Shown piece after piece: positions 1 through 47,375 of a stretch of DNA of 64,000 nt. The translations under genes and the position numbers were made by a program. The notes beneath the pieces were generated by a model that was not told the DNA's origin, did not search any database, and was given only the letters and a program-made list of their open reading frames with translations. The first letter of the stretch is position 1. Every line of letters starts with the position of its first letter. The DNA comes from Thalia democratica (lineage: Eukaryota): contig OZ241832.1 in NCBI GenBank assembly GCA_965202585.1, forward strand, positions 23,870,001 through 23,934,000, read 5' to 3'.

Positions 1-94
1 TTCGAGCGCTTTGCCACCAAAGCTACACATTTGGCTCACTACAACAAGCGTATAACCATCAGCAGTCGCAAAAATTAAATCTGGTGTTCGTCTA
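1..94 (+). pseudogene. Histone H2B-like relic (C-terminal half; cut by window start, truncated after VRL)
   Basis: Translates [23 protein letters not shown], then a +1 frameshift in an A-run, then IKSGVRL. This matches the H2B core [31 protein letters not shown]. The LLPGELAKH... tail is absent. Confidence 0.88.
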
Positions 95-511
95 AGAAAG
101 CTGTGTGGTTTTTACCTTATTCAAAAATTCAAAACTTTAGGGTGTCAATTTTCCATCCAAAAATAGATTACTTTGATAAAAAAGGATAAATGAATTTTAA
201 GTTAAATAACCATTGATATTTGCTGTAGGCAGTTGGCAATATCAATTATTTGTAGATGAGCTAGCAATAAGAACCTAATTTTAATTAACTATTAAGGTTA
301 AATTTTTATTTACTTAAAGTCAAGCTAGACAGACTAAAATGTTTTTGCTCTTATGCATTTTCTTTTTTTTTATTCTTAAGTTTTTGTCAAACGACTAAAA
401 TCCTATGTTTTAACTGCTATTTAATTAAATTTTCTTCTATATCTTATTGTATTAAGTGTTTATTTGTATTGTAACTAGTTTAATATTTCAGATACTTAAA
501 CAAAACAAAAT

Positions 512-2101
512 ATGGAAAACGTTTTGAGACTAACCATTGGAAAGAATAACATTGATGAAGGTTTATTAAATGCACTTCTAATAAGCATGTGGCCAAAAGT
601 CGAGAAAGTTCACATTACTCAAAAAGCCAGTTATGTGGTATTCTCAACTGTTGAAGAAGCAAAACAAATGCTGGATTCCAAATCAATGAATCTTGAAGGT
701 TACTTGGTAAAAGTAGAGAAGCTAGATAGAAAGACAAGAAAAGATTTCAAAAGTTTAAGCAAGATTGCTTCAACTGAAAATAAATGTGACACGCTATCAA
801 ATGAACTTACCTGTTTACAAACGCAGATTGAAACAGAGACTGTTCCTGACAAAAGTCATCAACACAATAATAAAAAGAAACGTGCCTACTCATCGGTAAG
901 CATTTATATGATACATTAAAGTATAACAAAGTAAGATAAATCATCATAAAATTGTTTGTAATCTTAATTCTTTACAGTTTTTTAAGTCTATTAGTCTATG
1001 ACTTTGGATAAAATATTAAAAACAGACTAAAAACTTATAATATTATATTTAGCATTTAGTAACGCATAATACTGTCTTATATACAATAGAAATAGGAGTA
1101 TAATTAACATTAATTTATCAAACTATTTATCTTTACAGATTTTACGAAACAATACTAAAACAATGACATCATCCAAAGTTAAGAATAGACGTATAAGTAA
1201 AAACTATACTCAGTTGTTTTCAAAATTAAAAACAAACAAGTATCTTGAAGAAATCGAAACATCAAAATGGTTGAAATATTTAAACAACTCAATGAAACAA
1301 CATACTTGGCACCAAAATGTTATGCAAAGTTTTGTTAAAAAAGACCAATTTGCTTCGATTCAAATGAGTTGCAGTGATCTTTGGTCAATAGCAAACGAAC
1401 AAAGCTACATAGAAGATCCTGTTTTAGACGCAGTCCTAAACGACAGTTTTAAGGATCACAAACAAATAGGGTTTATTGAAACAAGTGTTTTCAATGCAAT
1501 TGAAAACCCTTTTTTCAGTGAAACGACTGTGACTCCTTTCAAAAATGATAAAGACGCGTACGTTGCCGTCAAGAACATAAACAACAATCACTGGATATTC
1601 GTTTTCCTTAATTTTTTAAACAAAACACTTTATGTTGTTGATCCAAGGCGGAGTGATGAGCAGATAGAAACAGCAAGAAAAGTTATGAAAGCTTTTAAAC
1701 AAGTGCACCATAACGAAATCAATGCAAGTGAAACATCGAAATGGAACTTTATGAGCGATGAATGGAACTTTGGTTGTATACAGCACAATATTCAGAGAGA
1801 TTGTGTCAACTGCGGTATTTATTGCATTGAATACGTTTTGAAAATTAAAAATGAATTTCCTGTTATACCTTCGTACTTACTAGTTAAAAGTAACTTTAAT
1901 GATAAAAGGCAGTTTTATACCGCAATGTTACTAAAAGTTTCAAAACCAAAGCTTAAAGTCGATAATGAAACAATAAAAGAAGAAGAAAAAGAATTTATTG
2001 AACATCCTTATTATGTGAGTAAAAGTTTAGATGAAGACGGATCAGGATTGGTTATAACATTAAGAAGAAAAAAAAACTTGAAAAAAGAAAGTAGAATCTG
2101 A
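512..2101 (+). CDS. RRM-like + Ulp1/SENP (peptidase C48) fusion protein, copy 1; join(512..895,1139..2101), 448 aa
   Basis: Donor TCG|GTAAGC after 895 (128 codons, phase 0). Acceptor CTTTACAG| at 1138 reads ILRNNTKT in frame into the ATG at 1163. Exon 1 shows an RRM-like pattern (LRLTIG / VEKVHIT / KASYVVFSTVEEAKQML / YLVKVEK). Exon 2 has the C48 catalytic set NNNHW (H143), VVDP (D160), IQRD (Q211) and NCG (C217), numbered on the 312-aa ORF. AATAAA at 2171. Confidence 0.85.
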
Positions 2102-2380
2102 AAGAGATATTTTTTAACTGGTTTATTTTATTATGTTTTATGAAACTTAATTTTTACTCATTTTCGCTACAATAAACAAAACAGTTTACCAAAATAAACA
2201 ATACTTGTTTTTTTATACTTGTATAGTTTTTTACAGTAAGACAAAGAATTGCACGACATAAAGTATTTTGTTTGGGTTTATAAACGGGTAGTCAAATGTT
2301 TTAGAAAAAAAAAAAGATTAAACTTAAAACTAGAGCTATAGCTTTACTTAATCTAGCTAACTTTTAAATGTACTAGATAC

Positions 2381-2730
2381 CAGTAGCGACGCGGAGTAAT
2401 TTTGATAGGGTCGCGGAAATACTATGCAATCAGGCAAATCCCCAAATAATTGTCTATAGCCTTGAGTGCTTCGGTTCTCGTACTCTGCACTTAATGACTT
2501 GCTTGTTGTGAAGGACTGTTTTATAAATTTCTAGCGTAGCCTGCTTATTTGATTGCTTCCCTACGCCTGCCTGCTAAGTCGCTACTTTTTTAGACTTCTA
2601 GCTGAAACTGTTTAATTTGCGTGTTGCTGCTGCTTAGCTATTAGTTTCACTCGCTCGATCGCTTCTGTTTGATTTTCTGTTTGAATTTAGTACATATTTT
2701 ATATACAACAGCCGAAAACTAATTTTGAAA
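2381..2730. other. GC-richer non-coding block, nearly identical in the second copy (46402-46750)
   Basis: CpG-containing stretch downstream of the protease gene that looks more conserved between copies than its AT-rich flanks. No ORF. Confidence 0.5.
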
Positions 2731-3348
2731 TTCACATGGTGCTAAACTTTATTAAGAATTTTGCTGTTCATAAGCATTCTGTCATGTAAATTACAACACG
2801 TTTAAAATGCAGCTGACACAGACTGAGCTTTTATCAAACAATATGAAAATTTCAAATATAAAGTCAAAAATTTTAACAAAATAGTGTTTAGCAAGAAAAT
2901 TAATGTTTGAGCTTTATAATAAAGTTATTCTAATTTAGCTTGACGAGGTATAGTGAAAGCAGGTCTCTATTTGAAGCAAAGTCCTTAAAAGGTTAAATTC
3001 AACGACTAAAACTTTCTAAAATTTTATTTAATTTTTTTTAAGTGTAGCAACAGCTCTAGCGTTCTGCGCCAGGCTTCTCCATTGATTTTTTAACTAATAA
3101 ATTAAAAATACTTGATTATGCTTCGTAAATTAATAATACTTTTATTTTTTTTATGTTAAAAATTATCTAGAAATCCTTAGTCAAATAACTATGAATTTAT
3201 TTTAGTTTATCAAAATTGTTACTTAAATAGTGACTTAATACTCATTTACTTTTTATACTGGTTCTAAATGTCAAACCTCACTTTTAAAAGGGAACGGGTC
3301 AGAAAAACAGGGCGTCGTTTTAGTACGGGGAGATTTTTTTGCACAAGT

Positions 3349-3506
3349 TTACTTAAGCACAAAGTGACACTTTAGCAAGAAGTAACATTTTAGCACACAT
3401 TTATACTTTATAACAAAATGACACTTTATGTGGGAGTGACACTTTAGCACATAGTAAAACTTCAACATGGAGTGAAACTTTAGCACAAAGTGACACTTTA
3501 GCACGA
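3349..3506. repeat. 18-bp minisatellite (TTTAGCACAAAGTGACAC consensus), about 9 units
   Basis: Direct tandem units are visible. The minus-strand 64-aa ORF with KCHFVL repeats reflects the 18-bp period. A shorter array sits at the same position in copy 2. Confidence 0.85.
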
Positions 3507-4986
3507 ACCGGCTTTCTTCCATAATGCATAAAATTTTTACCATTTTTTTTTTAAATCCTAAAACAAACTATGCAACATGTAGACTAAAAGTTAAAAAACT
3601 TTAATAATGTTACAAGTTAAAGCTAAAACTAGAAATTCATGTTTAATATACAGTACATCATTTTATTTAAAGCAAACCTCAACTTTTAAAGTATAAAATA
3701 AAAATAAATTTACAAATTCTGTTAACTCACTTTAAAATTTAAATAAACTTTAAAATTTTAGGCTTTAGTTCTAATAGTATTAAACTTTTTTAAATTTCAA
3801 AACATGATTTACTTTTATTTAAACGCCAAAATTATTTAGAAACTTTTCTGTCATAATGTTTAGTAAATATAATGTAAGCTGAAATTACATAAACAGCTGC
3901 TAGTGAATAATAACATTGAATAGTTAAAAGAGTAGAAAAATCAAAAAAAAAGATGGTAAAAAATATACTTGAATATTTTCTTTTATAATCAAAGTTAAGT
4001 TATTATTGTTTGTTATTGAATTAAATGTGATTCATTTTTAGGCTTAATAATTTTTCTAAATATCTAAGTATGTTCTTGAGACTAAAGAAATATTAAATTT
4101 ATTAATTTAAGTATAAATGATGCTGTTAAATTAAACTTTTTGTTTTTATTTAGATTTTTTAAAACAAATAAACACTTAAAAGAGTTTTTAACATATGTAC
4201 TTAAAAATCCTTAGATTTAATGCTTAGTAGCTTTAAAATTTAACATAATGATTATAGTTTCTAGTTAAATAGAAAAGATTGATTTAAAATGTTTTTACTT
4301 GTTTAAGTTAGTTTACAACTACAAAATACACATAAATATAAATACTTGTTGACTGTTTAAGTAAGTTTTTAAAAATGTTGATACCAACTACTATTACATA
4401 ACAAAAAAGTATTTAACGTAGTGTGAAATTTTTGAATTGTATTTAAAATTATTTTATCATTAAGTTTCAAATCATTACAATTTGTTCATGTAAGTACAAT
4501 TTATATAACAAAACACTTCTGGAAAGATAAGCTTTGAACTTAATGAACATATTTTCAGTGCACAATTTGCATACATTAACTTAAACTAGTAGAAATAATA
4601 AAATTGAAAGTTGTAGTTTTGTCACTAACAACATTATTACAAAGTAGTGTGGAGAAATTTATTTCTAATGTCAGACGAGTTCATGAGTTATGTATTTTTT
4701 TATTTACACGATCAATACGTTGAAATCATAAACTTTTTGACACTTTCATGGACACATAAATAAAAAGGTGATTTAAATTATTAAAGTTTTTTGCAAGAAG
4801 AGCATGTTTAACTTAAGTTTGGTTAAGTAGTTAATTGTAACTAAAAAAATTTAAACACATTTTTAAATAAAAAAATATATAAAGATTGAATCTTATTTCA
4901 TACTATTGTTTAAAAATTCTATAAAACTCTTTGATAAAATTTATATAGTTTACAAAAAATTTTATCCTTAACTTTTTTATCTAATG

Positions 4987-12439: not shown

Positions 12440-14310
12440 TTAAATTTTGTTCTATTATTGCTAAGAACATGTGCTGGATAAATTAATATCAAAGAGTTTA
12501 TTTTTAGGTTAAAATTATTTTTAAGTATAAAATTTTTCAATTTGTTCGTTAAAAGTCCATTAATAAACATGAAAACTTATTTAGTTTCTATTTTTCCTTA
12601 TTTCATTAAATCTTAAAATCAAGTCCTATTTTGACTAAATTAAATTTTGTTTTATCTATTGTAGACTAAAGTACTGTAGTCAGATGCAAAAAGTTAAAAA
12701 TTCATTTTGTCATATATGTATCTTATTAAATTAATAGGATAACAAAAATTATTATTAATCAATAATTGATTATTAATGGATTTCATTGATAAGATTGTTA
12801 AGTGTTTGCCGTTATAAGTGCAGAAATAATAAATAATAAAACACTTTTTTTAACACAATTTCTGGATAAAGTTAAAATACAGTGTTTTTACAATACTGAA
12901 GAATTTAGTTGTAATTTTCCGCTTAAAAAAGTTAAGTAGATTAGTAAATATAACTTCATTATAAATTAACTAATTAAAAGTATAAAGTATATTCAATATA
13001 AAAAACTAGAAAATGGTTAAAACCATCAAAAAATCAGTCTAAGTCTTATACTATAGTCTTTATTCTATTGAATAAGATTTGAAAATGTTTGTTTTTTAAT
13101 ATACCAAAGATTTTTTTGAAGTTTTTGTAAAAGACTGATTTTTTTGATAGTTCTGGCCATTTTTTTATTTTTGTTTAGTCAGTATACTTTATATTTCTAA
13201 TCTCACTATAACACAGGCTGACAAAAATAACTTTTTAGCTTTAAATAGTGTAAATTTTGTTCAAATATAGTATTACTTTTATTAGTATAGTCAAATAATT
13301 ATTAAATTTTAGTAATTAGAACTAGCTAAGAATTAGAATTGATCTTAAAATGAAACTGCACTTTAGCTGTATACTATTAGCAATAACAGTTTTATCTAAA
13401 AGAGTTTGAGGTAGAAGCTGATGATTAATAAGAAATTGGGGTTGCACTCTCCGATTATTTTAAAATACTTTTGATGTTAATGTTAAATTTTTTTAAGTAT
13501 TTTAGGAAAATATTAATGTAAAGCAGAACTGTTTTGAGTTGGCTTTTTTTTTTTTGAAATTCAATGTATTAAAACAATTTTATTATATGTTCAATAAGTT
13601 TTTACCCACCTAGATTAAATTTAAGTACTAAAATCTATTGTAAAGACTAAAAAAGGTTATTATAATCAATAGCTTTATTTTAGTAACCTAATGCTTGTTA
13701 AACTTTTTGCCTTATTATAGGAAAAGTTCAATACTATAAATAAACAATAATGAATAAAAATTATTTTTATAACAATTAATGAGGAAAACAAAAAAAACAA
13801 GATTTTTATACAAAGACAATTAGAGTCAGTTCTTTTCTAGATCAGAAATAAAACGAGAGAAAAATGAAGATGAGAGAACATTTTTATCACTAGTGTGCGC
13901 TCTTAATTTCTTCTAGCCGAGATTCGTAACTATAGCTAGGATTCGTAACTATAGAACATGATGAGACACATCTTTAAAATCTTATTCATAGACAATGGCA
14001 GCATCCAAAGGTAGCTAGAAAGTAGTAAACGACGTTCCAGCTAATGTAGCTAGAAAAAGTGTAGGTTTCATTGTAAGGTAAGCTTTAGCATCAACTTGTA
14101 TAAAGTGCTCAAGCAAGTACACACTGATACTGGTTTTCAGCAAAGCCATGTGCATCACAGAGTATTTAGAGGTAGAAGCTAAAGGTTAAAAATATTTAGG
14201 GTAACACTGTCCGATTGTTTGAAAAAAGTTGATGATTTCGAATGTTAAGGTTTGTAGTTTAAGTTTGTTAAGAAGATATTAATGTAAAGCAGAATTGTGT
14301 TTATATGATT
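12440..14310 (+). repeat. Partial third copy of the H2B-bearing block; paralogous to about 41120-43390
   Basis: Shared anchors in the same order: GCTAAGAACATGTGCT, TGTAGACTAAAGTACTGTAGTCAG, TATAGTCTTTATT...GAATAAG, TTTTATCACTAGTG, H2B N-terminal relic, ATTAATGTAAAGCAGAATTGTGTTTA. Copy 2 has an extra 0.5 kb or so near 41700-42200. Confidence 0.85.
13995..14159 (+). pseudogene. Histone H2B-like relic (N-terminal half)
   Basis: ATG GCA GCA TCC AAA GGT ... then [12 protein letters not shown](fs)SKAMCI, matching H2B [18 protein letters not shown]. Contains stops and frameshifts. Confidence 0.8.
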
Positions 14311-16447
14311 TTATAACTTTATAGACTCAAGCCTAAAGAGACAGGAAAAAATAAAACACAATAATCTTTTTTTTTTCTGTTGTTTACAAAAAGTTTACAT
14401 TAAAAGCTTTCGTAATTTTGTTGAGTTCTAAATATTTTTATAAATACAACGTCGTGTCTTAAAAGTTTTATGAATATAATAATTAATGTCAGGGTTTACT
14501 GTGTAAATTTGATAACAATCTTTACTAGTTATGAAGACATAACAATTGATTACACTTTTAATCTAAAGAGTAATACAGTAAAAATGTATTGACTTAAAAT
14601 AAACACAACTTATAAAAATTTAAGCTTTTATTCAGTTACTGCTGATAAAGTTATCTTGTTAACTTGTCTGCTATTGAAAATAAAACAAGTTTTATAAAAA
14701 AATTATTCTATCTATTAGTTCTTGATCTTTGGTACCTTTTAGCTTTATTAATAAAATATATTTAAAACTACAGTTTACTTATGAAACAAATTATCAAAGA
14801 TTAGACTTACTAAACCTTAAAAGGTGTTTACTAATTGTTTTATACTACTTACAATTTTTTTTTTTAAATCAACTTTAAATAAAATATTAAGCAATTAAAG
14901 TTGAACTTATATTTGTATGATAACATAAAAGCACTTACATTCCTTTCTTTAAAAACTTACTTAAACTTCAGGTGATTTTGATAACGTAAAAACGTTTAAG
15001 TTAGTTTAAATGTCAATATTTAAAAGATGTTAACTAAAAAACTTTATATTTAATTAAAGTTTACAGTTTTGCTACTCTAAATAAACAAACTCAGACGAAA
15101 AATCTATATTTTTAATAACAAGTAGGAGTAACTAGTACTCATTTAATATATTAAAAGCTTGTATTTTTTTGTGTAGACGTAGATAAACAATAAACTAGTT
15201 TAAAAAAAATACTAGAAGAAACTAAAAAATTGGATATTTTTAGTAACTGTTGAGGAAAATGTGAAAAATACTTAAAAGTATTCAAGTTTGATACAAGCTA
15301 TTCGTGTTATTTGCACATATAGAAGCATTTCAAATGCTGAGCAATGGTTGGAGCAATATTTGCTAAATTGTTTGCAGCATTTTTAAATTCCTTGTAATGT
15401 TTTACAAAGAATTACATTAAAAGCTTATTTATATTCCTAAAACGCTTCGTTATTTTGAAAATTCCAAGATTATATAATTTTATAACTTTAAAATTTTGTA
15501 ATGTAATTTTTAACTAAAACACCTTCGTCAGTTTCAAAATTTCAAGGTTATATGGTTTTTAATAACTAAATAAGCTGAAATTTTAAAACGGCCTTAGTTA
15601 GTTGTTAGACACATTTTTTATCAAATGCGTACATGATAAACCAAACAACCTAAATAAAACAATTTTAAGGTAGATCTTTTAATTTTTAACCCTAATATTA
15701 AAGAAATTTGTATCAATTCAATGAAGCTACTGGTTTTTAAGTCTTGTCAAGTATTGATGCCAGTCTTAAGTAGTAAAATGTTTATGGGTGTCTCATTTAT
15801 ATATCAATCAATAATAAAAAGTAATTTTAATATTATATCATATAGTTAGTTTTTTATGCTGCATTAACGGTTTTTGACAGACAATTTTAACTTTTAATGT
15901 TTAAAATTAATCACAAAGGATAAAAGAAAACTTTAGTTCGTAACGTTTATTATTTAGAATTAAATAAAGTGTTATAAAAGGATTAAAGTTGTCGCTCTTA
16001 GTTTTCAATACTTTTATCGTTTAATCCCTGACTAAAGTATTTATTAATTATTCTTATAAACTAATTTTTTCATTTACTTTAGAACAAATATTTTAAACAA
16101 AAAGTTATTAAGGAAAGCCGTTATAATTGGGGACTTAAACACATTCCTATCTTAATATCTTAACTAATTATTACTGGCTAATTTATTGTAGCACTAGCTT
16201 ATAAAAGCTTGAAAACAGGCTCTAAATTTAAATACTACGAAGCAATACTTCTCTCGAAAATCGTTTTATTACGAAATTCACAATAAAATACGACGTCACA
16301 GATAGATTTTATTCAAAGAGATTTAATTTTAGTAAAAAAATTAGTTGCGTATTAAACAAGAAAAGCGTACTTAAAAAGTGCAAACTTAACCTCAAGATCA
16401 CTGTAGTATATATGGTTTAATACTTGAATTACAATTTATTTTTACTT

Positions 16448-19335
16448 AAAAGAATTAACTGATTTAGTTACTTTTGCTTTCAATTTTTACAGGTCAGACC
16501 ATTTTCAAATAAATTTAAAACATTTTAAAAATTCAATGGTTTGTTTGCACAACTGAAAGCGTTTGAGAATTTCTACAACAATTGCAGCATTAATTGCAGC
16601 GGTTTAAATTTTGTCATAAAAAACATAAATTCCTAAAGGTCATGAATTTAAGTTGCAATAAAACAAAACACAAAAAGTAAACACAAACCATACGTTTTAT
16701 ACGGCATAAAAACGTATTGTTTCTAACCAGCTATTTTTTCTAAAAAGTATTAAAAATAAGACAAAAAAAATATTAATAAAATTATATCAATTAAGTATAA
16801 CAATCAGTAGAGTTATTTCAACAGATAAAATTTTAAGTTGTCTGTCGTGAAAACTGTTTTTTACGGTTAAATTTCTAGTTTAGTTTTAAACATTTATCAT
16901 TGCTAGTCCTTAAGATGCAAAAGTTTTTCAAACATAAAAGGTTATTGATGTTTTTTAAACACTTAATGCTGACACCGTAGAACAATAACTAAAATTATAA
17001 AAGTATACAATGTTTAAAAGTTATTGCATATAAGTTTTTGTCACATTTTGTTTAATATCTAGGGAGGTATGAATTCAAAAGTTTTTAAAAAACTAGAATG
17101 AAAAATTGTATTGGAGTAAAAATATAAATGTATTCCAAGAGATAATATCCCTTATTTAGAAAACCATGTTTTTTGATAAAAGTAAAATATTTAAAGTTTT
17201 TTTTTATCTAGATAAACTACAAAAAAGTTGTTAAAAAGTGATTATAAGTTCTTCAAATCTTTATAAACAAACTTAAAATTATAAAGTAAAAGTAATTCTT
17301 GTTTCAACCAAAAACTATCAAGCCTAACAAAAAATTATTTTAGTAAACTAATTTTAATTAATATTAAAAATTTATAATGCGCGTTAAAAAATCTTTTTAC
17401 AAACTTGTATAATTAGTTTAAATTCAATGATTTTTAATAAGTATTTTAATTAAATTTACTTAAAGTTAGTCTTAAAGTTTTACAAGTTTTAACTTTTGAA
17501 ATAGAAATACATTTAATCTTACAAAAAAATACAGCTTTACAATGAAATTCGCGTGAGTATTCGCGTTATTTGCACAAATAAAAAATTTTTACAAAACTAA
17601 GCAACAATTGCAGCAATAATTTGCTAAATTGTTTGCAACACTTTTAAATTCCTTGTAGTGTTTAACAAAAAATTACAATAAAAACTTGTTTAAATTCCTA
17701 AAGTGCTTCGTCATTTCTAAAACTTCAAGGTTATATGGCTTAAAATTTCCTATAAAAGCTGGAATTTACAAAAGAATGGCTATCATAAAATTAGCAGCTA
17801 CTAGTTCACTTATGAATAAAACTATAGTTTTATTCATATTTATAACTCTAATTTGTAGCAAGATAGGATAGAAAATACAATAAGTTTATACTATTCTAAA
17901 GGCATAAGCTTTTTTTTTTTTGTTTGTTACCTCTACAAACTAATAGCTGGTTTAGTTTAATGAATTTAGTTTTATTATCATTAGCTGTGTATCGTACACT
18001 TAAATATTTAAATATTTCAAGTTTATAATTTCAACTGATGTAATTAGAAAGTTAGGGTGATAATGAAAGTACTTATGAGTACAAATTAATTTTTTAAAAT
18101 TACTAAAATATAATAAACAAATTACTTTATTATACTAAAAAACATTAGTAAAATAATTTACATGTTGTTTACAATTATGTTTACAACTGTAGTACAATAA
18201 AATTATTAATGAGTTTTAAATATATATATAAATTAAAGCAATGTATATAACATAGCTCATAATTGTTTAAATAGAACTGTTTAACAATAACTTATTTTAT
18301 TTTAAATAAAAAGTAGTTTAAAAAAAAAATATTGTTTATAAATTTTTGTATTTAAAAAATAATTTAGTATGTTCACTGAAAGAGCTGTTATTAAATAAAG
18401 CTTACATTTCATCTTAAAATTAAAACATAAGTTTTAAATGTCTGTTTTAGTTAAAAAGTACTTTAAAATAAAATGACTGATAAAATTAGGGCTAGGAAAT
18501 TTTCAAACACGCTAACGAAATAAATAGTTTTTTTTTAATAGTTATTTGTTTTTTAAGATATTGCATTTGATCTTTCTTTTTTGATAAACAAGTATGTATT
18601 TCAATATGATAAATTTAAACTGATATATACTTTTTCGACTAATGAGCAATTTAAAACCTATATAGTATTACTAAAAAAATTGCTTAACTATATAAAATTT
18701 CAAATTTTGTGCCGATTTAGAAATAAAAAGATTTTGGTTTATTAAGTAAACTTTTATAAACAAAAAAATACTAAGGAAATAAAAAAAAATATTTATACAA
18801 TACTTAAATGCTAGTTGTTTGAATAAGTCATAAGTTTATAGGTGAAACCTTTAAATATTACTAATCATATCACTAGAAAAATTTCAACTATAATTACACT
18901 TTTAAAGACTTAAACTCTAAACTATTAGATAATTTTATGTTTAAATATTCATTTAGCAAACTATTACAGTTCATTGGTAACTATTAGTTATTTTAAAAAT
19001 ATAAAGTTGATTTAAATTGTTTTTTATAAAATTTTTTTTTACAATGCTTTAAAAGTTGTAAAATGTCTGTTATAATTGAACTAAATTAATAAATTTATTA
19101 AAGCAATTAAAAATAAATACTTTTATAGTTATATGATATGCTGCAATCTAGTACAATATAATCATTCATTACAAAAAAAAAAACAGTAATGATCTGTTAG
19201 TTTATTTTTTAACTTTGTTCTAAATAAATATTTTATCCATATTTCAATAGAAATTAAACAAGTGTACAACAGTTTAAACGTTTTTTAAAGTATAAGTTTA
19301 CAAAAATATTAATGTAAGGTAAGAGTAAAACAATG
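16448..19335 (+). repeat. Unit 1 of a 2.9-kb head-to-tail tandem duplication
   Basis: Starts AAGAATTAACTGATTTAGTTAC and ends AAAAATATTAATGTAAGGTAAGAG. Colinear with unit 2 throughout. Confidence 0.93.
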
Positions 19336-19343
19336 AATACTTA

Positions 19344-22225
19344 GAAGAATTAACTGATTTAGTTACTTATGCTTTCAATTTTTACAGGTCAGACCATTTT
19401 CAAATAAATTTAAAACATTTTAAAAATTCAATGGTTTGTTTGCACAACTGAAAGCGTTTGAGAATTTCTACAACAATTGCAGCATTAATTGCAGCGGTTT
19501 AAATTTTGTTGCAAAATTTACAAAAAGCATACGTCATAAAAAACATAAATTCCTAAAGGTCATGAATTTAAGTAGCAATAAAACAAAACACAAAAAGTAA
19601 ACACAAACCATACGTTTTATACGGCATAAAAACGTATTGTTTCTAACCAGCTATTTTTTCTAAAAAGTATTAAAAATAAGACAAAAAAAAATTAATAAAA
19701 TTATATCAATTAAGTATAACAATCAGTAGAGTTATTTCAACAGATAAAATTTTAAGTTGTCTGTCTTGAAAACTGTTTTTTACGGCTCAATTTCTAGTTT
19801 AGTTTTAAACATTTATCATTGCTAATTCTTAAGATGCAAAAGTTTTTCAAACATAAAAGTTTACTGATGTTTTTAAACACTTAATGCTGATAACGTTGAA
19901 CAATAACTAAAATTATAAAAGTATACAATGTTAAAAGTTATTGCATATAAGTTTTTGTCACATTTGGTTTAATATCTAGGGAGGTATGAATTCAAAAGTT
20001 TTTAAAAAACTAGAATGAAAAATTGTATTGGAGTAAAAATATAAATGTATTCCAAGAAATAATATCCCATATTTAGAAAACCATGTTTTTTGATAAAAGT
20101 AAAATATTTAAAGTTTTTTTTTATCTAGATAAACTACAAAAAAGTTGTTAAAAAGTGATTATAAGTTCTTCAAATCTTTATAAACAAACTTAAAATTATA
20201 AGGTAAAAGTAATTCTTGTTTTAACCAAAAACTATCAAGCCTAACAAGGAATTATTTTAGTAAACTAATTTTAATTGATATTAAAAATCTATAATGCGCA
20301 TTAATAAAGCTTTTTACAAATTTGTATAATTAGTTTGAATTCAATGTTTTTCAATAAGTAGTTTAATTAAATTTACTTATAGTTAGACTTAAAGTTTTAC
20401 AAGTTTTAACTTTTGAAATAGAAATACATTTAATGTTACAAAAAAATACAGCTTTACAATGAAATTCGCGTGAGTATTCGCGTTATTTGCACAAATAAAA
20501 AATTTTTACAAAACTAAGCAACAATTGCAGCAATAATTTGCTAAATTGTTTGCAACACTTTTAAATTCCTTGTAGTGTTTAACAAAAAATTATAATAAAA
20601 ACTTGTTCAAATTCCTAAAGTACTTCGTCATTTCTAAAACATTAAGGTTATATGGCTTAAAATTTCCTATAAAAGCTGGAATATACAAAAGAATGGCTAT
20701 CATAAAATTAGCAGCTACTAGTTCACTTATGAATAAAATCATAGTTTTATTCATATTTTTAACTCTAATTTGTAGCAAGATAGAATAGAAAATATAATAA
20801 GTTTATATTATTCTAAAGGCATAGCTTTTTTTTTTGTTTGTTACCTCTACAAACTAATAGCTAGTTTAGTTTAATGAATTTAGTTTTATTATCATTAGCT
20901 GTGTATCGTACACTTAAATATTTAAATATTTCAAGTTTATAATTTCAACTGATTTAATTAGAAAAATAGGATGATAATAAAAGTACTTATGAGTAAAAAA
21001 TTACTTTTTAAAATTACTTAAATATAATAAACAAATTACTTTATTATACTCAAAAACATTAGAAAAATAATTTACATGTTGCTAACAATTATGTTTACAA
21101 CTGTTGTACAATGAATTTATAAATAAGTTTTAAAAATAAATATAAATTAGAGCCATGTATATAACATAGCTCGTAATTGATTAAATAGAATTGTTTAACA
21201 ATAACTTATTTTATTTTAAATAAAAAGTAGTTTTGAAAAAAAAATGTTTAGAAGTTTTTGAGTTTAAAAGATGATTTAATATATTTACTGAAAGAGCTAA
21301 AACTTGCATTTCATCTTAAAATTAAAAAGTAAGTTTTAAATGTCTGTTTTGGTTGAAAAGGTACTTTAAAATAAAATTGTTAATATAATTAGGGCTAGGA
21401 AATTTTCAAACGAAATAAATAGTTTTTTTTATAAATGTTTTGTTTTTTAAAATATTTCATTTAATCTTTCTTTTTTGATAAACAAGTATGTATTTCAATA
21501 TGATAATTTTAAACTGATATATACTTTTTCGACTAATGAACAATTTAAAACCGATATAGTATCACTAAAAAAATTGCTCAACTATATAAAATTTCAAACT
21601 TTGTACCAATTTAGAAAAAAAAAGGTTTTGGTTTGTTAAGTAAACTTTTATAAACAAAAAAAAAACTAAGGAAATAAAATAAATATTTATAAAATACTTA
21701 AGTATTAGTTGTTCGAATAAGTCATATGTTTATAGGTGAAATCTTAAAATACTATTAATCATATCACTAGAAAAATTTCAACTATAATTACACTTTTTTA
21801 GACTTAAACTCTAAACTACTAGATAATTTTATGTTTTAAATATCCATTTAGCAAACTATTACACATTCATTGGTAACTATTGATTATTTTAAAAACATAA
21901 AGTTTTTTTTTATAAAATATATTTTTACAATGCTTTTAAAAGTTGTAAAATGTCTGTTATAATTAAACTAAATTATTCAATTTATTAAAACAACTAAAAA
22001 TAAATACTTTTATAGTCATATGATATAATGCAATCTAGTACAATATGATCACTTATTACAAAAAAAAACAGTAACGATCCAAGCGTTTATTTTTTTTACT
22101 TTTTTCTAAATTAGTATTTTATCTAAAAATTTCAATAGAAATTAAATAAGTGTATAACAATTTAAACGTACTTTAAAGTATAAGTTTACAAAAATATTAA
22201 TGTAAGGTAAGAGTTATTGACAATG
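19344..22225 (+). repeat. Unit 2 of the 2.9-kb tandem duplication
   Basis: Same start and end motifs. The duplicated small ORFs 17686/20603 confirm the period of about 2.9 kb. A more diverged partial copy of an internal segment lies at about 15295-15560. Confidence 0.93.
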
Positions 22226-40165: not shown

Positions 40166-43100
40166 AGTATGTTTAGGATATTCAAGGTTTATTTAGTAAT
40201 AGGTCAAATTACTTATGAATAAACTTCTTCATATTTATATAAATTATGTTTTTTATACATACATAACTTCTGTCAAAAAAGTATTTCGTAAGTATAGAAG
40301 TATATTAACTAACAACTCAAGTTATTTTCACTGTCGTGACACAAATATTTATAGTAGTAGCAAGTTTTTAAGAATACTATACTAACTTTATATATAATTT
40401 ATTTGTAGTACTAAAAAATTAATTTAGTTACTAACTTAAACTATCATCTTGTTAACAGGTAAAGAAATACTAAAAAAATAATTAAAAAGTAGACTATAAT
40501 GTTAAACGCTAGAAACATTTTAAAACTATATAATTTTAGATTAATTAGTTCTAAGTTTATTTGATTTTATGAAAAAAACTTTTTTACTTGGTTAAAAAAA
40601 TCAAATCAGTTTATGTATATTTTTAGTATATAAAATAACTTTTTTACGTATAATATCTACTACTCTTTTGATTTTAAAACATTCATTTTTTTACCTTTTT
40701 GATGAATTGTTTAAGTTTTTTTTACAAATTAGATAAAATAATTCACACTTTGTTTGTTTTAGAATTTGTTAGCTTGAACTAACTAAATGCTCAATGAATT
40801 ATAAATATACTGAGTGCATTTATTTTGCTACATAAACACTAAATGCGTTGTAGATCTCATTACCGAACATTTCAACAAACAATTTTAATAGTAAACAAGT
40901 ATAGCAGACTATAAAACTTTGAAGTAAACAAGTACTTTGTAGAAATAAGAGCAAAAATATTTTATTTATTTAATTCTAAGTACTAAGTTTGTATTATGTC
41001 TGTTTATTTCAGTAATGTGTTTAACAAATTTAATATTTTAAATTTTGTAGTAAAAAAATAACTTCAGCAGGCTTCGGCAAACGATTATATAACTATTGTT
41101 CGATATCTATTGATATAAAATTTTGTTTATTTAAGCTAAGAACATGTGCTCGCTAAAATCTAAATCAGAGAGCTTACTTATAGGTTAAAACTATTTTTTG
41201 AGTTTTAAAAAACTTTCCATTGATTGTTAAACGTCAATTAATAAACATAAAAACTTATTGAGTTTCTATGTTTCCTTATTTCATTAAATTTAAAAAATCA
41301 AAAATTATTTTAATTAAATTAATAAAATTATTTTACATTTTGTAGACTAAAGTACTGTAGTCAGTTGCAAAAAATTTAAAATCTATTTTTCATAATATGT
41401 ATATTATTAAATTATCAATAGTCATAACCTGATTATTAATGAATTTTATTTACAGGATTATTAATGTTTGTTCCTTCACAATAGCAGTAATAATAAATAA
41501 TTAAACACTTTTTTGTAACATAATTTCTGTATGAATATTAAAATACAGTGATTTACATAAGTCAAGAATTTAGTTGTAATTTTCCGCATTAAAAAAATTA
41601 AAGTATATAAATAAAAAAACTTTATTGTAAATTAACTAAAATAGTTAAGCATTTTAAATTACTCAATATTTGTAACTACTTGGTCATTTGAATAAGAAAT
41701 AAATCAAAATATACTATTTTTTATCTGAAGGCTCTTAATAAAATCAGTTGTATCTAGAAGAGCTACTAGTAAGAGATTAGAATTAATTTGTTTTTAGGGT
41801 AGAGTATTGTTTTTACTTCAAATGAAATTTAAGTTTTAAATAAAATTTGTGATCTTCATTTTTAGTAATTTTGTATTAAGTTCGTTAAGTATATTAAGGT
41901 GACTAAGGAGGAACTTAATTAATATTACTGTTTAGTATTATTTTTTTAATAAACTTTCTACAAAATTGTATTTATGTTTAAGATTTGACACTGAAGAAAA
42001 AAAATATTATAAAGCATATGGTAAAATTTTTGCTTTCTTATAGCTCAGAATCTAAAAAGTAATGCCTTTTTATAATAATTATGTGCTTATTAAAGGTTGA
42101 ACTTCAATATAAATAATAAAATAAAACGGGATAAAGGTAGACTGCCTCTTTTGATTACAAAAACCAGACATGATTTGACTAAACCGAAATTGTAAAAACG
42201 GTTTAAGCTACCAAAAATTTCAGTCTCAGTTTTTTACTATAGTCTTTATTTTATTGAATAAGAATTGAAAATGTTTGTTTTTTAATAAACGAAAGATCTT
42301 TTTGAAGTGTTTGTAAAATACTGAGACTGATTTTTTTGATGATTCTTATTGTTTTTTATATTTGTTTATTCAATATACTTTATATTTTGAAATTTACTTT
42401 AACGCAGGCTAACAAAAATTTCGTTTTAGCATTAAATAGTGTAAATTTTGTTTAGATGTAATAAAGTTTTTAGTAATACAGTTGAGCAAATTTAAGGTTT
42501 TAGTAGTTAGAACTCGTTAAGAATCAGAAATAATCTGAAAATGAACTTTAGTTGTATATTATTAGCAATATCAGTTCTATCTAAATTAGGTTGAGGTACA
42601 AGCTGTTGGTTAAAATAAATTAGGGTTGCTCTCTCCGATGGTTTTAAAATCTTTTACATAATTCCAAATGTTAATGTTTGTATTTTAAGTATATTAGGAA
42701 AATATAAATGTAAAGCAGATCTGTGTTCAGTTATGTTTTTTTTTTTTTGAACTACAATGTATTAAAACAATTTTATTATATCTTTTTTTAATAATTTTTT
42801 TCTACCTATACCAAATTTAAGTACTAAAATCTGTTGTAAAGACTAAAAAAATTCATTTAAATCATCAGCTTTATTTTTGTAGTCTAATGCTTGTTAAAAA
42901 TTTTACCTCATTATAGGTAAAATTCAATGCTATAAATATACAATAATGAATAAAACTTTTTTTTAATAAAAACTGATGAGGAAAATAAAAAACTTACACT
43001 AGTTTTATTTTAAGATAGTTGGAGCCAGTTCTTTTCAAGTTCTAAATTAAAAAGAGAGACAAAAAAGATGAGAGAAAATTTTTATCACTAGTGGGCGCTC

Positions 43101-43846: not shown

Positions 43847-44124
43847 ATGGCAGCATCCAAAGCTAGCAAGAAAGTAGTTAAGGACGTCCCAGCTTTAGGT
43901 AGCTAAAACAAAGTGTAGGTCTCATTGTAAGGAAAGCTTCAGTATCAACGTGTACAAATTTTTCAAGCAAGTACACCTTAGTTACTTGATTTTCAAGCGA
44001 GGCCTTGAACATCATGAAGTCTTTTGTCAACGATATGTTCGAGCGCATTGCAACCAAAGCTACACATTTGGCTCACTACAACAAGCGTTTAGCAGTCGCA
44101 AAAATTAAATCTGGTGTTCGTCTA
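43847..44124 (+). pseudogene. Histone H2B-like pseudogene (near full length, lacks C-terminal helix)
   Basis: MAASKASKKVVKDVPA(fs)..KESFSINVYKFFKQVH(fs)[32 protein letters not shown](del)..IKSGVRL. Confidence 0.9.
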
Positions 44125-44529
44125 AGAAACCTGTTTGGTTTTTACCTAATTCAAAAATTCAAAACTTTAGGGTGTCAATTTTCCATTCAAAAATTGATTA
44201 ATTTGATAAAATAGGATAAATGAATTTTAAGTTAAATAACCATTGATATTTGCTGTAGGCAGTTGGTAATATCAATTGCTTGTAGATGAGCTAGCAATAA
44301 GAACCTAGTTTTAATTAACTATTAAGGGTAGATTTTTATTTAATTAAAGTCAAGCTAGACAGACTAAAATGTTTTAGCTATTATGCATTTTCTTTTTTTT
44401 TATTCTTAAGTTATTGTCAAACGACTAAAATCCTATGTTTTAACTGCTATTTGATTAAATTTTCTTCTATTTAGTGTTTATTTGTATTGTAACTAGTTTA
44501 ATATTTCAGATACTTAAACAAAACAAAAT

Positions 44530-46120
44530 ATGGAAAACGTTTTGAGACTAACCATTGGAAAGAATAACATTGATGAAGGTTTATTAAAGGCACTTCTAAT
44601 AAGCATGTGGCCTAAAATCGAGAAAATTCACATTACTCAAAAAGCCAGTTATGTGGTATTCTCAACTGTTGAAGAAGCAAAACAAATGCTGGATTCCAAA
44701 GCAATGAATCTTGAAGGTTACTTGGTAAAAGTAGAGAAGCTAGATAAAAAGACAAGAAAAGATTTCAAAAGTTTAAGCAAGATTGCTTCAACTGAAAATA
44801 AATGTGACACGCTATCAAATGAACTTACCTGTTTACAAACGCAGATTGAAACAGAGACTGTTCCTGACAAAAGTAATCAACACAATAATAAAAAGAAACG
44901 TGCCTACTCATCGGTAAGCATTTATATGATACATCAAAGTATAACAAAGTAAGATAAAACATCATAAAATTGTTTGTTTTCTTAATTATTTACAGTTTTT
45001 TAAGTCTATATAGTTTATGACTTTGGTTAAAATATTAGAAACAGACTAAAAATTTATAATATTATATTTAGCATATAGTAACGCTTAACACTGTCTTATA
45101 TACAATAGAAATAGGAGTATAATTGATTTTAATTTTTCAAACTATTTATTTTTATAGTTATTACGAAACAATACCAAAACAATGACAACACCCAAAGTTA
45201 AGAATAGACGTATAAGTAAAAACTATACTCAGTTGTTTTCAAAATTAAAAACAAACAAGTATCTTGAAGAAATCGAAACATCAAAATGGTTGAAATGTTT
45301 AAACAACTCAATGAAACAACATACTTGGCACCAAAATGTTATGCGAAGTTTTGTTAAAAAAGACCAATTTGCTTCGATTCAAATGAGTTGCAGTGATCTT
45401 TGGTCAATAGCAAACGAACAAAGCTACATAGAAGATCCTGTTTTAGACGCAGTCCTAAACGACAGTTTTAAGGATCACAAACAAATAGGGTTTATTGAAA
45501 CAAGTGTTTTTAATGCAATTGAAAACCTTTACTTCAGTGAAACGACTGTGACTCCTTTCAAAAATGATAAAGACGCGTACGTTGCCGTCAAGAACATAAA
45601 CAACAATCACTGGATATTTGTTTTCCTCAACTTTTTAAACAAAACACTTTATGTTGTGGATCCAAGGCGGAGTGATGAGCAGATAGAAACAGCAAGAAAA
45701 GTTATGAAAGCTTTTATACAAGTGCACCATAACGAAATCAATGCAAGTGAAACATCGAAATGGAACTTTATGAGCGATGAATGGAACTTTGATTGTATTC
45801 AGAACAATATTCAAAGAGATTGTGTCAACTGCGGTATTTATTGCATGGAATACGCTTTGAAAGTTAAAAATGATTTTCCTATTATACCTTCGTACTTACT
45901 CATTGAAAGTAACTTTAATGATAAAAGACAGTTTTATACCGCATTGTTACTAAACGTTTCAAAACCCAAGCTTTCAGTCGAAAATGAAACAATAAAAGAA
46001 GAAGAAAAAGAATTCATAGAACATCCTTATTATGTGAGTAAAACTGTAGATGAAGACGGATTAGGATTGGTTATAACATTAAAAAGAAAAAAAAACTTGA
46101 AAAAAGAAAGTAGAATCTGA
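44530..46120 (+). CDS. RRM-like + Ulp1/SENP (peptidase C48) fusion protein, copy 2; join(44530..44913,45158..46120), 448 aa
   Basis: Donor TCG|GTAAGC after 44913. Acceptor TTTATAG| at 45157 reads LLRNNTKT in frame into the ATG at 45182. H/D/Q/C catalytic residues intact. 31 aa differences from copy 1 (6 in exon 1, 1 in the linker, 24 in the 312-aa ORF). AATAAA at 46190. Confidence 0.85.
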
Positions 46121-47375
46121 AAGAAATATTTTTTAACTGGTTTATTTTATTATATTTTATGAAATTTAACTCTTACTCATTTTCGCTACAATAAACAAAA
46201 CAATTTACCAAAATAAACAATACTTGTTTTTTTTATACTTTTATAGTTTGTTACAGTAAGACAAAGAATTGCACGACATAAAGTATTTTGTTTGGGTTTA
46301 TTAAACGAGTAGTCAAATGTTTTAGAAGCAAAATAAGTTTAAACTTAAAACTACAGCTATAGCTATAGTTAATCTAGCTAATTTTTATATGTGCTAGATA
46401 CCAGTAGCGACGCCTTGTAATGTTTATAGGGGTCGCGGAAATACTATGCAATCAGGCATATCCCCATATAATTGTCTTTAGCTTTGAGTGCTTCGGTTCT
46501 CGTACTCTGCACTTAATGACTTGCTTGTTGTGAAGGACTGTTTTATAAATTTCTAGCGTAGCCTGCTTATTTGATTGCTTCCCTACGCCTGCCTGCTAAG
46601 TCGCTACTTTTTCAGACTTCTAGCTGACACTGTTTAATTTGCGTGTTGCTGCTGCTTAGCTATTAGTTTCAGTCGCTCGATCGCTTCTGTTTGATTTTCT
46701 GTTTGAATTTAGTACATATTTTATGTATAACAGCCGAAAACTAATTTTGAAATTCACATGGTGCTAAACTTTATCAAGAATTTTGCTGTTCATAAGAATT
46801 CTGTCATGAAAATTACAAAACATTAAAAATGCAGCTGACACAGACTGAGCTTTTATCAAACAATAGGAAAATTTCAAATATAAAGTAAAAAAATTTAACA
46901 AAATAGTATTTAGCAGGAAAATTAATGTTTGAGCTTTATAATAAAGTTTTTCAAAATTAGTTTGACGTGGTATATTAAAAAGCAGGTCTCTATTTGAAGC
47001 AGAGTCCTCAAAAGCTTAAACTAAACGACTAAAACTTTTTAAAACTTTATTTATTTTTTTCAGGTGTAGCAACAGCTGCAGCGTTCTGCGCCAGGCCTCT
47101 CTATTGATTTTTTACATAAAAAATTAAAAATACTTGATTATGCTTCGTAAATTAATAATACTTTTATTTTTTTTAATGTTAAAAAATATCTAGAAATCCT
47201 TAGTCAAATAACTATGAATTTATTTTAGTTTATCAAAATTAATACTTAAATAGTGACTTAATACTCATTTACTTTTTATACTGGTTCCAAATGTCAAACC
47301 TGACTTTTAAAAGGGAACGGGTCAGAAAAGCACGTGCGTCATTTTAGTAAGGGGTAATTTTTTTGCACGAATTTA

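What the first reader, a model, noticed from the sequence alone, without database searches (positions are those of the whole stretch)
512..2101. Hidden RRM-deSUMOylase-type fusion gene: two ORFs are one spliced 448-aa protein
Seen: both copies keep a phase-0 GT donor after codon 128 and an AG acceptor exactly 24 nt (8 open codons) before the second ATG, although the acceptor itself diverged (CAG vs TAG). Known: C48 proteases (Ulp1/SENP/NEDP1) use H-D-C with an oxyanion Q and remove SUMO or NEDD8; transposon-borne Ulp1 domains occur in several DNA transposon groups. Inference: an RRM-like domain fused to an active-looking C48 protease, with basic NLS-like patches (KKKR, RRKKNLKK), is not an architecture I recognise from standard SENP families. 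It could target deSUMOylation or deNEDDylation to RNA or chromatin.
Basis: partly seen in the sequence, partly recalled or inferred. Interest (0 to 1): 0.85.

Follow-up and report, generated by a model that had tools for sequence, protein, structure and literature searches.

The report
Candidate spliced RRM–Ulp1-like protease gene
Two neighbouring reading frames in a sea-squirt-type (tunicate) genome encode a small RNA-binding-type domain and a divergent SUMO-protease-type enzyme that could be spliced into one 448-residue protein, but no RNA data were available and all relatives of the enzyme stand alone, so the fusion remains a reasonable candidate rather than a finding.

Summary
The sequence observation holds. 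Both copies (512-2101 and 44530-46120) have a 128-codon first frame that ends at a phase-0 GTAAGC. A 243/244-nt AT-rich gap follows, then an AG exactly 24 open nt before the ATG of a 312-codon frame.

Both domain calls hold only indirectly:
- **Exon 1:** no Pfam RRM hit. An AlphaFold model (pLDDT 78) has RRM topology, and the 50 best PDB fold matches shown are almost all RRM domains.
- **Exon 2:** no Pfam C48 hit. Three homologues (43-59% identical) pass Pfam's Peptidase_C48 cut-off. The family profile aligns H143, D160, Q211 and C217 with the HW, D, Q and CG motifs of yeast Ulp1.

Both frames look selected. Exon 1 diverges 1.8% between copies against 7.4% in the gap, and there are no indels in 1347 coding nt against 9 in 1946 non-coding nt.

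The fusion itself is untested and partly undercut:
- The only runs holding the sequence look like DNA.
- None of 11 protease homologues has an RRM.
- Every homologue has a splice acceptor 2-33 nt before its ATG, mostly with a closed or out-of-frame leader. This looks like a 5'-leader or spliced-leader acceptor that predates the RRM exon.

The RRM module also heads a PARP-like protein. No transposon hallmarks were found. Earlier notes record a similar unproven in-frame pair (FAF1 fragment plus PARP-like gene) elsewhere in this genome.

The parts
478..491 (+). Acceptor-like site (ttaatatttcAG) 20 nt before the exon-1 ATG. Probably the 5'-leader or spliced-leader acceptor of the unit.
   Evidence: Relatives of the RRM family (L010, L011, L012) have the same feature about 21-23 nt before their ATG.
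512..895 (+). Exon 1 candidate, 128 codons: RRM-type domain (about aa 1-71, nt 512-724), a predicted helix and linker, then the basic patch KKKR.
896..1138 (+). Candidate intron, 243 nt (244 nt in copy 2), GTAAGC...tttacAG. It holds in-frame stops, one indel between the copies, and 7.4% divergence.
1139..1162 (+). 24-nt open leader between the acceptor and the ATG of ORF2. It is either 8 linker codons or 5' UTR. Three of its 24 nt differ between the copies.
1163..2101 (+). ORF2, 312 codons plus stop: divergent Ulp1/SENP-type (clan CE, C48) cysteine protease. His143 is at nt 1589-1591, Asp160 at 1640-1642, Gln211 at 1793-1795 and Cys217 at 1811-1813. The C-terminal tail is basic.
2171..2198 (+). 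Two AATAAA signals 70-95 nt after the ORF2 stop, kept in copy 2 (46190, 46212).
   Evidence: AATAAA and ATTAAA are frequent in this AT-rich DNA, so this is weak evidence.
44530..44913 (+). Copy 2, exon 1 candidate.
44914..45157 (+). Copy 2, candidate intron (244 nt, GTAAGC...tttatAG).
45158..46120 (+). Copy 2, leader plus ORF2 (ATG at 45182).
1..3700 (+). Duplicated unit, copy 1, cut by the window start. It repeats at about 44030-47700 with 94-99% identity. It contains an H2B-like relic (1-75), the two ORFs and about 1.6 kb of downstream non-coding DNA.

Best explanation
This is a young, lineage-specific chimeric gene in a pelagic tunicate.

An intronless Ulp1/SENP-type cysteine protease gene already carried a splice acceptor just upstream of its start codon. 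Its relatives use that acceptor for a 5' leader, most likely the spliced leader. The 5' part of a gene from a lineage-specific RRM-domain family came to lie 243 nt upstream of it. Other members of that RRM family head PARP-like enzymes.

The RRM frame now ends at a strong GTAAGC donor. A transcript started upstream of exon 1 would therefore cis-splice 895 to 1139 in frame. The product would be a 448-aa protein made of an N-terminal RRM-type domain, a basic linker and a C48 protease with an intact H-D-Q-C active site. It would presumably remove a ubiquitin-like modifier from targets selected by the RRM module.

Shown:
- The two frames and their splice signals.
- The RRM fold.
- C48 family membership through homologues.
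- The catalytic residues.
- Purifying constraint on both frames.
- The multi-copy status of the unit.

Inferred:
- Co-transcription.
- Use of the 895/1139 junction.
- Substrate and function.
For: - **Junction geometry:** identical in four genomic copies.
- **Donor unlikely by chance:** a phase-0 GTAAG within 10 codons of an ORF end is expected about 1% of the time.
- **Exon 1 conserved:** it diverges 1.8% between copies against 7.4% in the gap (Fisher p = 0.001) and 6.3% in all non-coding parts (p = 2e-4).
- **Frames kept intact:** no indel in 1347 coding nt against 9 in 1946 non-coding nt (P = 0.002). The diverged gap lies between two conserved coding blocks, which argues against simple gene conversion.
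- **Exon 2 selection:** pN/pS is 0.41, with an excess of synonymous changes (p = 0.011).
- **RRM module heads larger proteins elsewhere:** P0008 joins it to a PARP-like domain in one ORF, and P0007 carries two modules.
- **RRM fold:**
- **C48 membership and catalytic residues:**
- **Splicing rule in tunicates:** acceptors paired with an upstream donor are cis-spliced rather than trans-spliced (PMC1488885).
- **Not a Ciona-type operon:** Ciona operons have no intercistronic DNA (same paper), whereas here the spacing is 219-243 nt.
Against: - **No RNA evidence:** the three runs laid look like DNA. Depth is even over flanks, exons and gap, contigs run from exon 1 into the gap (833-1077), and no 895/1139 joint was seen. 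No listed RNA run holds the sequence.
- **Homologues lack the RRM:** none of the 11 protease homologues has an RRM in its ORF. No RRM-like sequence appears in the available upstream DNA, including 3.7 kb in L013.
- **Conserved start position:** window ORF2, P0002 and P0012 start within about 7 residues of each other, which points to an ancestral start codon at 1163.
- **Acceptor is family-wide and usually non-coding:** the leader has an in-frame stop in L002, L013 and L019, and is out of frame in L014-17 and L018.
- **Exon 1 substitutions:** the few changes between the copies are 6 non-synonymous to 1 synonymous.
- **Leader divergence:** the 24-nt leader diverges like non-coding DNA (3 of 24).
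Confidence: 0.5

Rival explanations
1. These are two separate genes. ORF2 is an ordinary member of the intronless Ulp1-like family. Its mRNA starts at, or is spliced-leader trans-spliced to, the acceptor at 1138 and is translated from ATG 1163 as a 312-aa protease. ORF1 is an independent small RRM protein of 135-140 aa, or the stranded first part of an RRM-family gene. The in-frame geometry is a coincidence.
For: - Every homologue stands alone, with an acceptor 2-33 nt before its ATG and mostly a closed or out-of-frame leader.
- The start codon position is conserved.
- Earlier notes of this scan report a Ciona-type spliced leader in this genome.
- ORF1 has its own leader acceptor 20 nt before its ATG.
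- An analogous unproven pair, a FAF1 fragment upstream of a PARP-like gene, was noted elsewhere in this genome. Such in-frame pairs therefore recur and may partly be picked out by the search itself.
Against: - A consensus donor at phase 0 just before the end of ORF1 is expected only about 1% of the time.
- If both ORFs lie on one transcript, that donor would pair with the acceptor (PMC1488885).
- ORF1's tail after the donor differs in length between the copies (7 against 12 residues) through a stop/CAA change.
- No conserved AATAAA or ATTAAA lies in the gap: the ATTAAA at 915 and 1015 of copy 1 are absent from copy 2.
- A promoter would have to fit within 243 nt.
Confidence: 0.33
2. This is a decaying or selfish multi-copy unit with no host function. 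The ORFs are recent copies of a repeat, possibly cargo of an unrecognised mobile element, that have not yet had time to break. Neither is expressed as a functional protein.
For: - The unit is multi-copy: 165-216 variant contigs at 90-100% identity per run were laid on 3 kb, two copies lie in the window, and further copies were found in metagenomes (L001, L007).
- It travels with an H2B pseudogene piece.
- L001 has a frameshifted C-terminal tail.
- The related RRM-family locus L008 has an in-frame stop.
- Runs X21 and X22, from the same samples as X1 and X3, hold none of the sampled words. Their kind is unknown.
Against: - Coding parts are significantly less diverged than the gap and flanks and are free of indels. 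Exon 2 has pN/pS of 0.41.
- The catalytic residues are invariant across 12 family members down to 32% identity.
- No terminal inverted repeats were found around copy 2.
- No transposase-sized ORF lies beside homologues L013 or L014.
Confidence: 0.15

Closest known systems
Ulp1/SENP family of SUMO-specific proteases (MEROPS C48, Pfam PF02902; yeast Ulp1 1euv, human SENP1/SENP2)
   Same: - The order and spacing of the catalytic His, Asp, oxyanion Gln and Cys match.
- The family profile aligns with the Ulp1 and SENP2 catalytic cores (E = 0.0013 and 0.008).
- Three homologues pass Pfam's cut-off.
- 78 of the 100 nearest ESM Atlas clusters are PF02902.
   Different: - It is very divergent: the window protein itself gets no Pfam C48 hit.
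- The family is intronless, multi-copy and so far seen only in marine plankton metagenomes and this genome.
- N- and C-terminal tails are variable and of low complexity.
- Two members have Asn in place of the Asp.
- The substrate is unknown.
- No canonical SENP has an RRM (from memory of SENP1-8 architectures, not tested).
Transposon-borne Ulp1-like protease genes (plant KI-MULEs and CACTA elements, Ginger1, Hydra Mutator; a Foldback/Mutator element with Ulp1-PHD noted earlier in this genome)
   Same: - A divergent Ulp1-like domain in a multi-copy, fast-evolving, lineage-specific family.
- Fusion to a nucleic-acid or chromatin-type reader domain (PHD there, RRM here).
   Different: - No inverted repeats, transposase or target-site duplications were found here.
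- The two window copies look like a segmental duplication that also carries an H2B relic.
RRM-headed PTM enzymes such as PARP10 and PARP14 (N-terminal RRMs before a mono-ADP-ribosyltransferase domain)
   Same: - The exon-1 module is an N-terminal RRM-type domain.
- Its relative P0008 places it before a PARP-like catalytic domain.
- The proposed logic is the same: one reader domain, one modifying enzyme.
   Different: - There is no detectable sequence relationship to the PARP10 or PARP14 RRMs.
- Here the enzyme would be a protease of ubiquitin-like modifiers.
- The RNP2 aromatic residue is missing.
Tunicate spliced-leader trans-spliced genes and operons (Ciona, PMC1488885)
   Same: - The acceptor sits a few to about 30 nt upstream of the start codon, both in the protease family and in the RRM family.
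- The two ORFs are close together on the same strand.
   Different: - Ciona operons lack intercistronic DNA, whereas here the spacing is 219-243 nt.
- The downstream acceptor is paired with a consensus donor, which favours cis-splicing.

Membership tests
Peptidase C48 (Ulp1/SENP) | Match to Pfam PF02902 above the gathering score | tested here: not met
   The window proteins give no PF02902 hit at E <= 1. Homologues do pass the 20.7-bit cut-off: P0013 at 41.7 bits, P0012 at 30.1 and P0002 (59% identical) at 21.8. Membership is therefore transitive.
Peptidase C48 (Ulp1/SENP) | Catalytic His-Asp-Cys with oxyanion Gln, in that order and alignable to Ulp1 | tested here: met
   H143, Q211 and C217 are invariant in 12 sequences. 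D160 is Asp in 10 and Asn in 2. The profile aligns NHW / YVvDp / Q / NCG with the SHW / yVDS / Q / DCG motifs of yeast Ulp1 1euv.
Peptidase C48 (Ulp1/SENP) | Clan CE papain-like fold | tested here: inconclusive
   The AlphaFold model of exon 2 with 6 sequences reached only pLDDT 36.5, too poor for a fold search. ESM Atlas features point to PF02902 clusters (score 0.94, 177 shared features).
Peptidase C48 (Ulp1/SENP) | Cleavage of SUMO, NEDD8 or another ubiquitin-like modifier | not testable with these tools
   Needs an enzyme assay.
RRM (RNA recognition motif) | Match to PF00076 or related Pfam RRM models | tested here: not met
   Only RRM_fung at E = 0.08 and DUF4283 at E = 0.06, both below their cut-offs. 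The profile against PDB sequences gave nothing significant.
RRM (RNA recognition motif) | beta-alpha-beta-beta-alpha-beta fold superposable on solved RRMs | tested here: met
   The model has pLDDT 77.7 and pTM 0.66, with strands 4-9, 30-35, 40-44 and 58-70 and helices 16-26 and 47-54. The 50 best PDB matches shown are almost all RRM domains (E about 1e-3, rmsd 2-3 A over about 75-80 residues). The Swiss-Prot models agree.
RRM (RNA recognition motif) | RNP1 and RNP2 aromatic residues on beta3 and beta1 | tested here: inconclusive
   Read from alignment A3. Beta1 (VLRLTIG) has no aromatic residue at RNP2 position 2. Beta3 (SYVVF) keeps one aromatic residue (Y41; Y, H or F in relatives) plus F44. 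RNA binding can be neither inferred nor excluded.
Single spliced gene (cis-spliced two-exon mRNA) | Reads or cDNA that join 895 to 1139 (44913 to 45158) | tested here: inconclusive
   Only DNA-like runs were available. No such joint was seen, and contigs cross the donor into the gap. No RNA run holds the sequence.
Single spliced gene (cis-spliced two-exon mRNA) | Fused architecture conserved in more distant relatives | tested here: not met
   11 protease homologues and 4 RRM-module homologues were recovered, and none combines the two. The JGI metagenome and viral contig scans found no relatives.
Transposon-borne Ulp1 gene | Terminal repeats and/or a transposase in the same unit | tested here: not met
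   Only weak AT-rich inverted matches occur around copy 2. There are no transposase-size ORFs in the unit or beside homologues L013 and L014.
Tunicate SL-resolved operon | Downstream cistron with an unpaired acceptor directly abutting the upstream gene's 3' end | tested here: not met
   There are 219 nt between the ORF1 stop and the acceptor, and a consensus donor lies upstream. Use of the spliced leader itself could not be tested.

The most novel reading that the evidence does not exclude
The RRM-type module may be a lineage-specific targeting head that pelagic tunicates have repeatedly joined to different post-translational-modification enzymes. It sits before a PARP-like ADP-ribosyltransferase within one ORF, and here before a Ulp1-like protease through capture of a former spliced-leader acceptor as a cis-splice acceptor. 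This would give a rapidly expanding family of RNA- or partner-guided PTM enzymes, perhaps acting in conflict with viruses or transposons. An RRM-C48 protease would be a domain architecture that has not been described.
Probability: 0.2. Interest if true: 0.65.

Novelty: new variant of a known kind. Interest (0 to 1): 0.42.

Why it matters
If the junction is used, this would be a ubiquitin-like-modifier protease carrying an RRM-type head. I found no such combination among its relatives or among the nearest Atlas clusters.

It would also be a clean, recent example of how a spliced-leader acceptor in front of an intronless gene can capture an upstream exon and create a new multidomain protein.

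If the junction is not used, the locus is simply one more member of a divergent, expanded Ulp1-like gene family lying next to an RRM-family gene fragment. That is of interest mainly for annotating this genome.

Tried and rejected
- **RNA test:** The look-up of sequencing runs returned only runs of unrecorded or DNA kind. Read laying showed even depth over flanks, exons and gap and no splice joint.
- **Structure of exon 2:** AlphaFold with a 6-sequence alignment gave pLDDT 36.5. It was not used for a fold search.
- **JGI metagenome scan with the protease profile:** no relatives. The RRM alignment was too variable to scan with.
- **Viral contig scan:** no relatives. A giant-virus or Polinton origin is not supported.
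- **Transposon hypothesis:** no convincing inverted repeats and no transposase ORFs.
- **Nested-gene idea:** the RRM exon might splice to PARP-like exons lying beyond the protease gene. tblastn of P0006, P0008 and P0009 against the whole window hits only the two exon-1 loci.
- **Non-coding RNA in the conserved block 2392-2830:** no Rfam match and no tRNA.
- **Ciona 16-mer spliced leader:** absent from the window. The claim that this is a tunicate with that leader rests on earlier notes only.
- **Poly(A) signals as a discriminator:** AATAAA and ATTAAA are too frequent in this 25-30% GC DNA to be decisive, and they also occur inside exon 1.
- **Bacterial promoter/terminator scan:** irrelevant for a eukaryote and ignored.

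Full report
**What is in the sequence**

The window is AT-rich eukaryotic DNA (20-34% GC). A unit of about 3.7 kb at the left edge (1 to about 3700) is repeated at about 44030-47700, with 94-99% identity over most of its length. Each copy holds the following, read directly:
- A degenerate 3' piece of a histone H2B gene.
- ORF1: ATG 512 in copy 1, 44530 in copy 2.
- An AT-rich gap.
- ORF2: ATG 1163 in copy 1, 45182 in copy 2.

- Codon 128 of ORF1 ends at 895 (44913) and is followed by GTAAGC.
- ORF1 then closes after 7 more codons in copy 1 and 12 in copy 2.
- An AG at 1137-1138 (45156-45157) lies 24 open nt before the ORF2 ATG.
- The joined product is 128 + 320 = 448 aa.
- The gap is 243 nt in copy 1 and 244 nt in copy 2, so it is not a reading frame.

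Two more near-identical genomic copies from marine metagenomes, L007 and L001, keep the same signals.

**Is it more than chance?**

From the window's own composition, a GTAAG at a phase-0 position within ten codons of an ORF end is expected about 1% of the time.

The acceptor is different. Once the relatives are examined (see "The fusion itself"), an acceptor just before the ATG turns out to be a property of the whole family. Only 2 of 7 lineages have it in frame and open. The acceptor therefore contributes little, and the donor is the real sequence evidence.

**Exon 2 is a divergent Ulp1/SENP-type protease**

Pfam gives no C48 hit for the window's proteins, only a weak YopJ (clan CE) hint at E = 0.005-0.1. 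The sequence searches were nearly empty:
- A search of 5.8 billion proteins found four relatives.
- A profile search raised this to eleven.
- All come from ENA/Tara marine metagenome contigs.

Several lines then tie the family to C48:
- P0013, P0012 and P0002 pass Pfam's Peptidase_C48 cut-off at 41.7, 30.1 and 21.8 bits against 20.7. Four more relatives score just below it.
- In a 12-sequence alignment H143, Q211, N216-C217-G218 and W144 are invariant. D160 is Asp in ten sequences and Asn in two.
- The family profile hits yeast Ulp1 (E = 0.0013) and SENP2 (E = 0.008) across the stretch that holds these residues. NHW, D, Q and CG line up with the corresponding Ulp1 motifs.
- In the ESM Atlas, 78 of the 100 nearest clusters are PF02902, with a score of 0.94.

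The AlphaFold model of exon 2 was too poor to use (pLDDT 36.5). I file ORF2 as a new, very divergent member of C48. The substrate is unknown.

**Exon 1 is an RRM-type domain from a lineage-specific family**

An exhaustive phmmer search of 1.8 billion representatives found only five proteins:
- Its own cluster.
- P0006 and P0009, which are short.
- P0007, with two tandem modules.
- P0008, 685 aa. Here the module is followed in the same ORF by a PARP-like catalytic domain (Pfam E = 1e-4, below the cut-off; most nearest Atlas clusters are PF00644).

With a 7-sequence alignment, AlphaFold gives pLDDT 77.7 and a beta-alpha-beta-beta-alpha-beta core followed by a helix. The 50 best Foldseek matches shown from the PDB are almost all RRM domains, and the Swiss-Prot models agree.

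Sequence-level RRM models do not match. The RNP2 aromatic residue is missing, while one RNP1 aromatic residue (Y41) is kept. This supports "RRM fold" but not "RNA binding".

**Are the frames functional?**

| Region (copy 1 against copy 2) | Divergence | Indels |
|---|---|---|
| Exon 1 | 1.8% | 0 |
| Gap | 7.4% | 1 |
| All non-coding parts | 6.3% | 9 in 1946 nt |
| Exon 2 | 4.3% | 0 |

- Exon 1 is less diverged than the gap (Fisher p = 0.001) and than all non-coding parts (p = 2e-4).
- Finding no indel in the 1347 coding nt has P = 0.002, given the non-coding rate.
- Exon 2 has pN/pS of 0.41 with an excess of synonymous changes (p = 0.011).
- The diverged gap sits between two well-conserved coding blocks. 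That fits selection better than a single gene-conversion tract.
- One caveat: the seven substitutions in exon 1 are 6 non-synonymous to 1 synonymous.

**The fusion itself**

RNA evidence:
- The runs that hold the sequence are of unrecorded or DNA kind.
- When laid, they show even depth over flanks, exons and gap, contigs that run from exon 1 into the gap (833-1077), and no 895/1139 joint.
- This says nothing about splicing, and no RNA run was available.

Relatives:
- None of the eleven protease relatives has the RRM in its ORF.
- tblastn finds no RRM-like sequence in their available upstream DNA, including 3.7 kb in L013.
- Window ORF2, P0002 and P0012 begin within about seven residues of each other, just before the first conserved helix. 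ATG 1163 therefore looks ancestral.

The acceptor:
- Every relative has a pyrimidine-rich AG 2-33 nt before its ATG.
- The leader carries an in-frame stop in L002, L013 and L019.
- It is out of frame in L014-17 (2 nt) and in L018 (19 nt, against 24 nt in its close relative L006).
- The RRM-family genes, and exon 1 itself, have the same feature about 20 nt before their ATG.
- Earlier notes of this scan report a Ciona-type spliced leader in this genome. I did not verify this here, and the 16-mer is not in the window.
- The acceptor at 1138 is thus best read as the family's 5'-leader acceptor, probably for the spliced leader, and it predates the RRM exon.

**How it most likely works**

According to PMC1488885, spliced-leader trans-splicing uses only acceptors without an upstream partner donor. 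Paired acceptors are cis-spliced. Ciona operons also have no intercistronic DNA.

Here a consensus donor lies 243 nt upstream of the acceptor, and the ORF1 stop is 219 nt upstream of it. If transcription starts upstream of exon 1 and runs through, the expected product is the in-frame cis-spliced mRNA.

I therefore favour a young chimeric gene, with confidence 0.5. It would have formed when the 5' part of an RRM-family gene landed in front of an intronless Ulp1-like gene and took over that gene's leader acceptor.

The rivals are:
- Two separate genes, with ORF2 translated from its own ATG (0.33).
- A silent multi-copy unit (0.15).

The unit is multi-copy: 165-216 variant contigs per run were laid on 3 kb. 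I found no inverted repeats, transposase or viral relatives.

**Comparison with the known**

- The enzyme works like, and by transitive homology belongs to, the Ulp1/SENP C48 family.
- The family's habit resembles transposon-borne Ulp1 genes in being intronless, expanded, fast-evolving and variable in its tails. It fails that membership test here.
- The RRM-plus-enzyme logic resembles PARP10 and PARP14, and the module's relative P0008 is literally RRM plus a PARP-like domain.
- An RRM-C48 combination did not appear among the relatives or the nearest Atlas clusters. I know of none, but that is from memory and not from a database query.

**Verdict**

- The domain calls are supported by indirect evidence.
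- The fusion is plausible but unproven, and comparative data partly undercut it.
- Function is speculative.
- Interest is moderate, and a single RNA data set would settle the question.

Noticed in passing
window 2392-2830 and 46414-46850: A GC-richer block downstream of the protease gene is 98-99% identical between the two copies, better conserved than its flanks. It has no long ORF and no Rfam match. It may be a promoter or 5' UTR of a neighbouring gene, or an unknown non-coding element.
   Followed up: partly
window 1-75 and 44000-44090: An H2B-like 3' fragment (…[17 protein letters not shown]) degenerates after HYNKR. Contigs of public runs leave the window sequence at position 73 and continue as intact H2B, and depth there is 3-10 times higher than over the rest of the unit.
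   Followed up: partly
L010:579-2636 / L011:474-2531 (P0008): A 685-aa intronless ORF from Tara metagenomes joins the same RRM-type module to a PARP-like catalytic domain, and probably to a second degenerate one near the C-terminus. The module therefore heads different PTM enzymes.
   Followed up: partly
L012:209-1276 (P0007): This protein has two tandem copies of the RRM-type module. It may correspond to the 'intronless RRM-RRM family X' array noted elsewhere in this genome (s1-306602).
   Followed up: no
L008:27-534 (P0006): An in-frame TAA sits where relative P0009 has Glu, and homology continues after it. This is a pseudogene or null allele of the RRM/PARP-like family.
   Followed up: no
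L019:241-1938 (P0011): This protease homologue has a long C-terminal array of about 30-residue repeats (…EQKTSxSSKDLE…), which illustrates the family's variable low-complexity tails.
   Followed up: no
window 16400-22100: A tandem duplication of about 2.9 kb at 85-99% identity (repeat families D1, D6, D7, D9, D12, D15 and D16).
   Followed up: no
window 12500-13800 vs 41200-43000: Another dispersed repeat family at 78-89% identity, spaced about 29.2 kb apart, lies just upstream of copy 2 of the unit (D8, D13, D19 and D20).
   Followed up: no
runs X21, X22: Two further runs from the same samples as the best holders contain none of the sampled words of the gene. Their kind is not recorded. If they are RNA-seq, the gene is not detectably expressed in those samples.
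   Followed up: no
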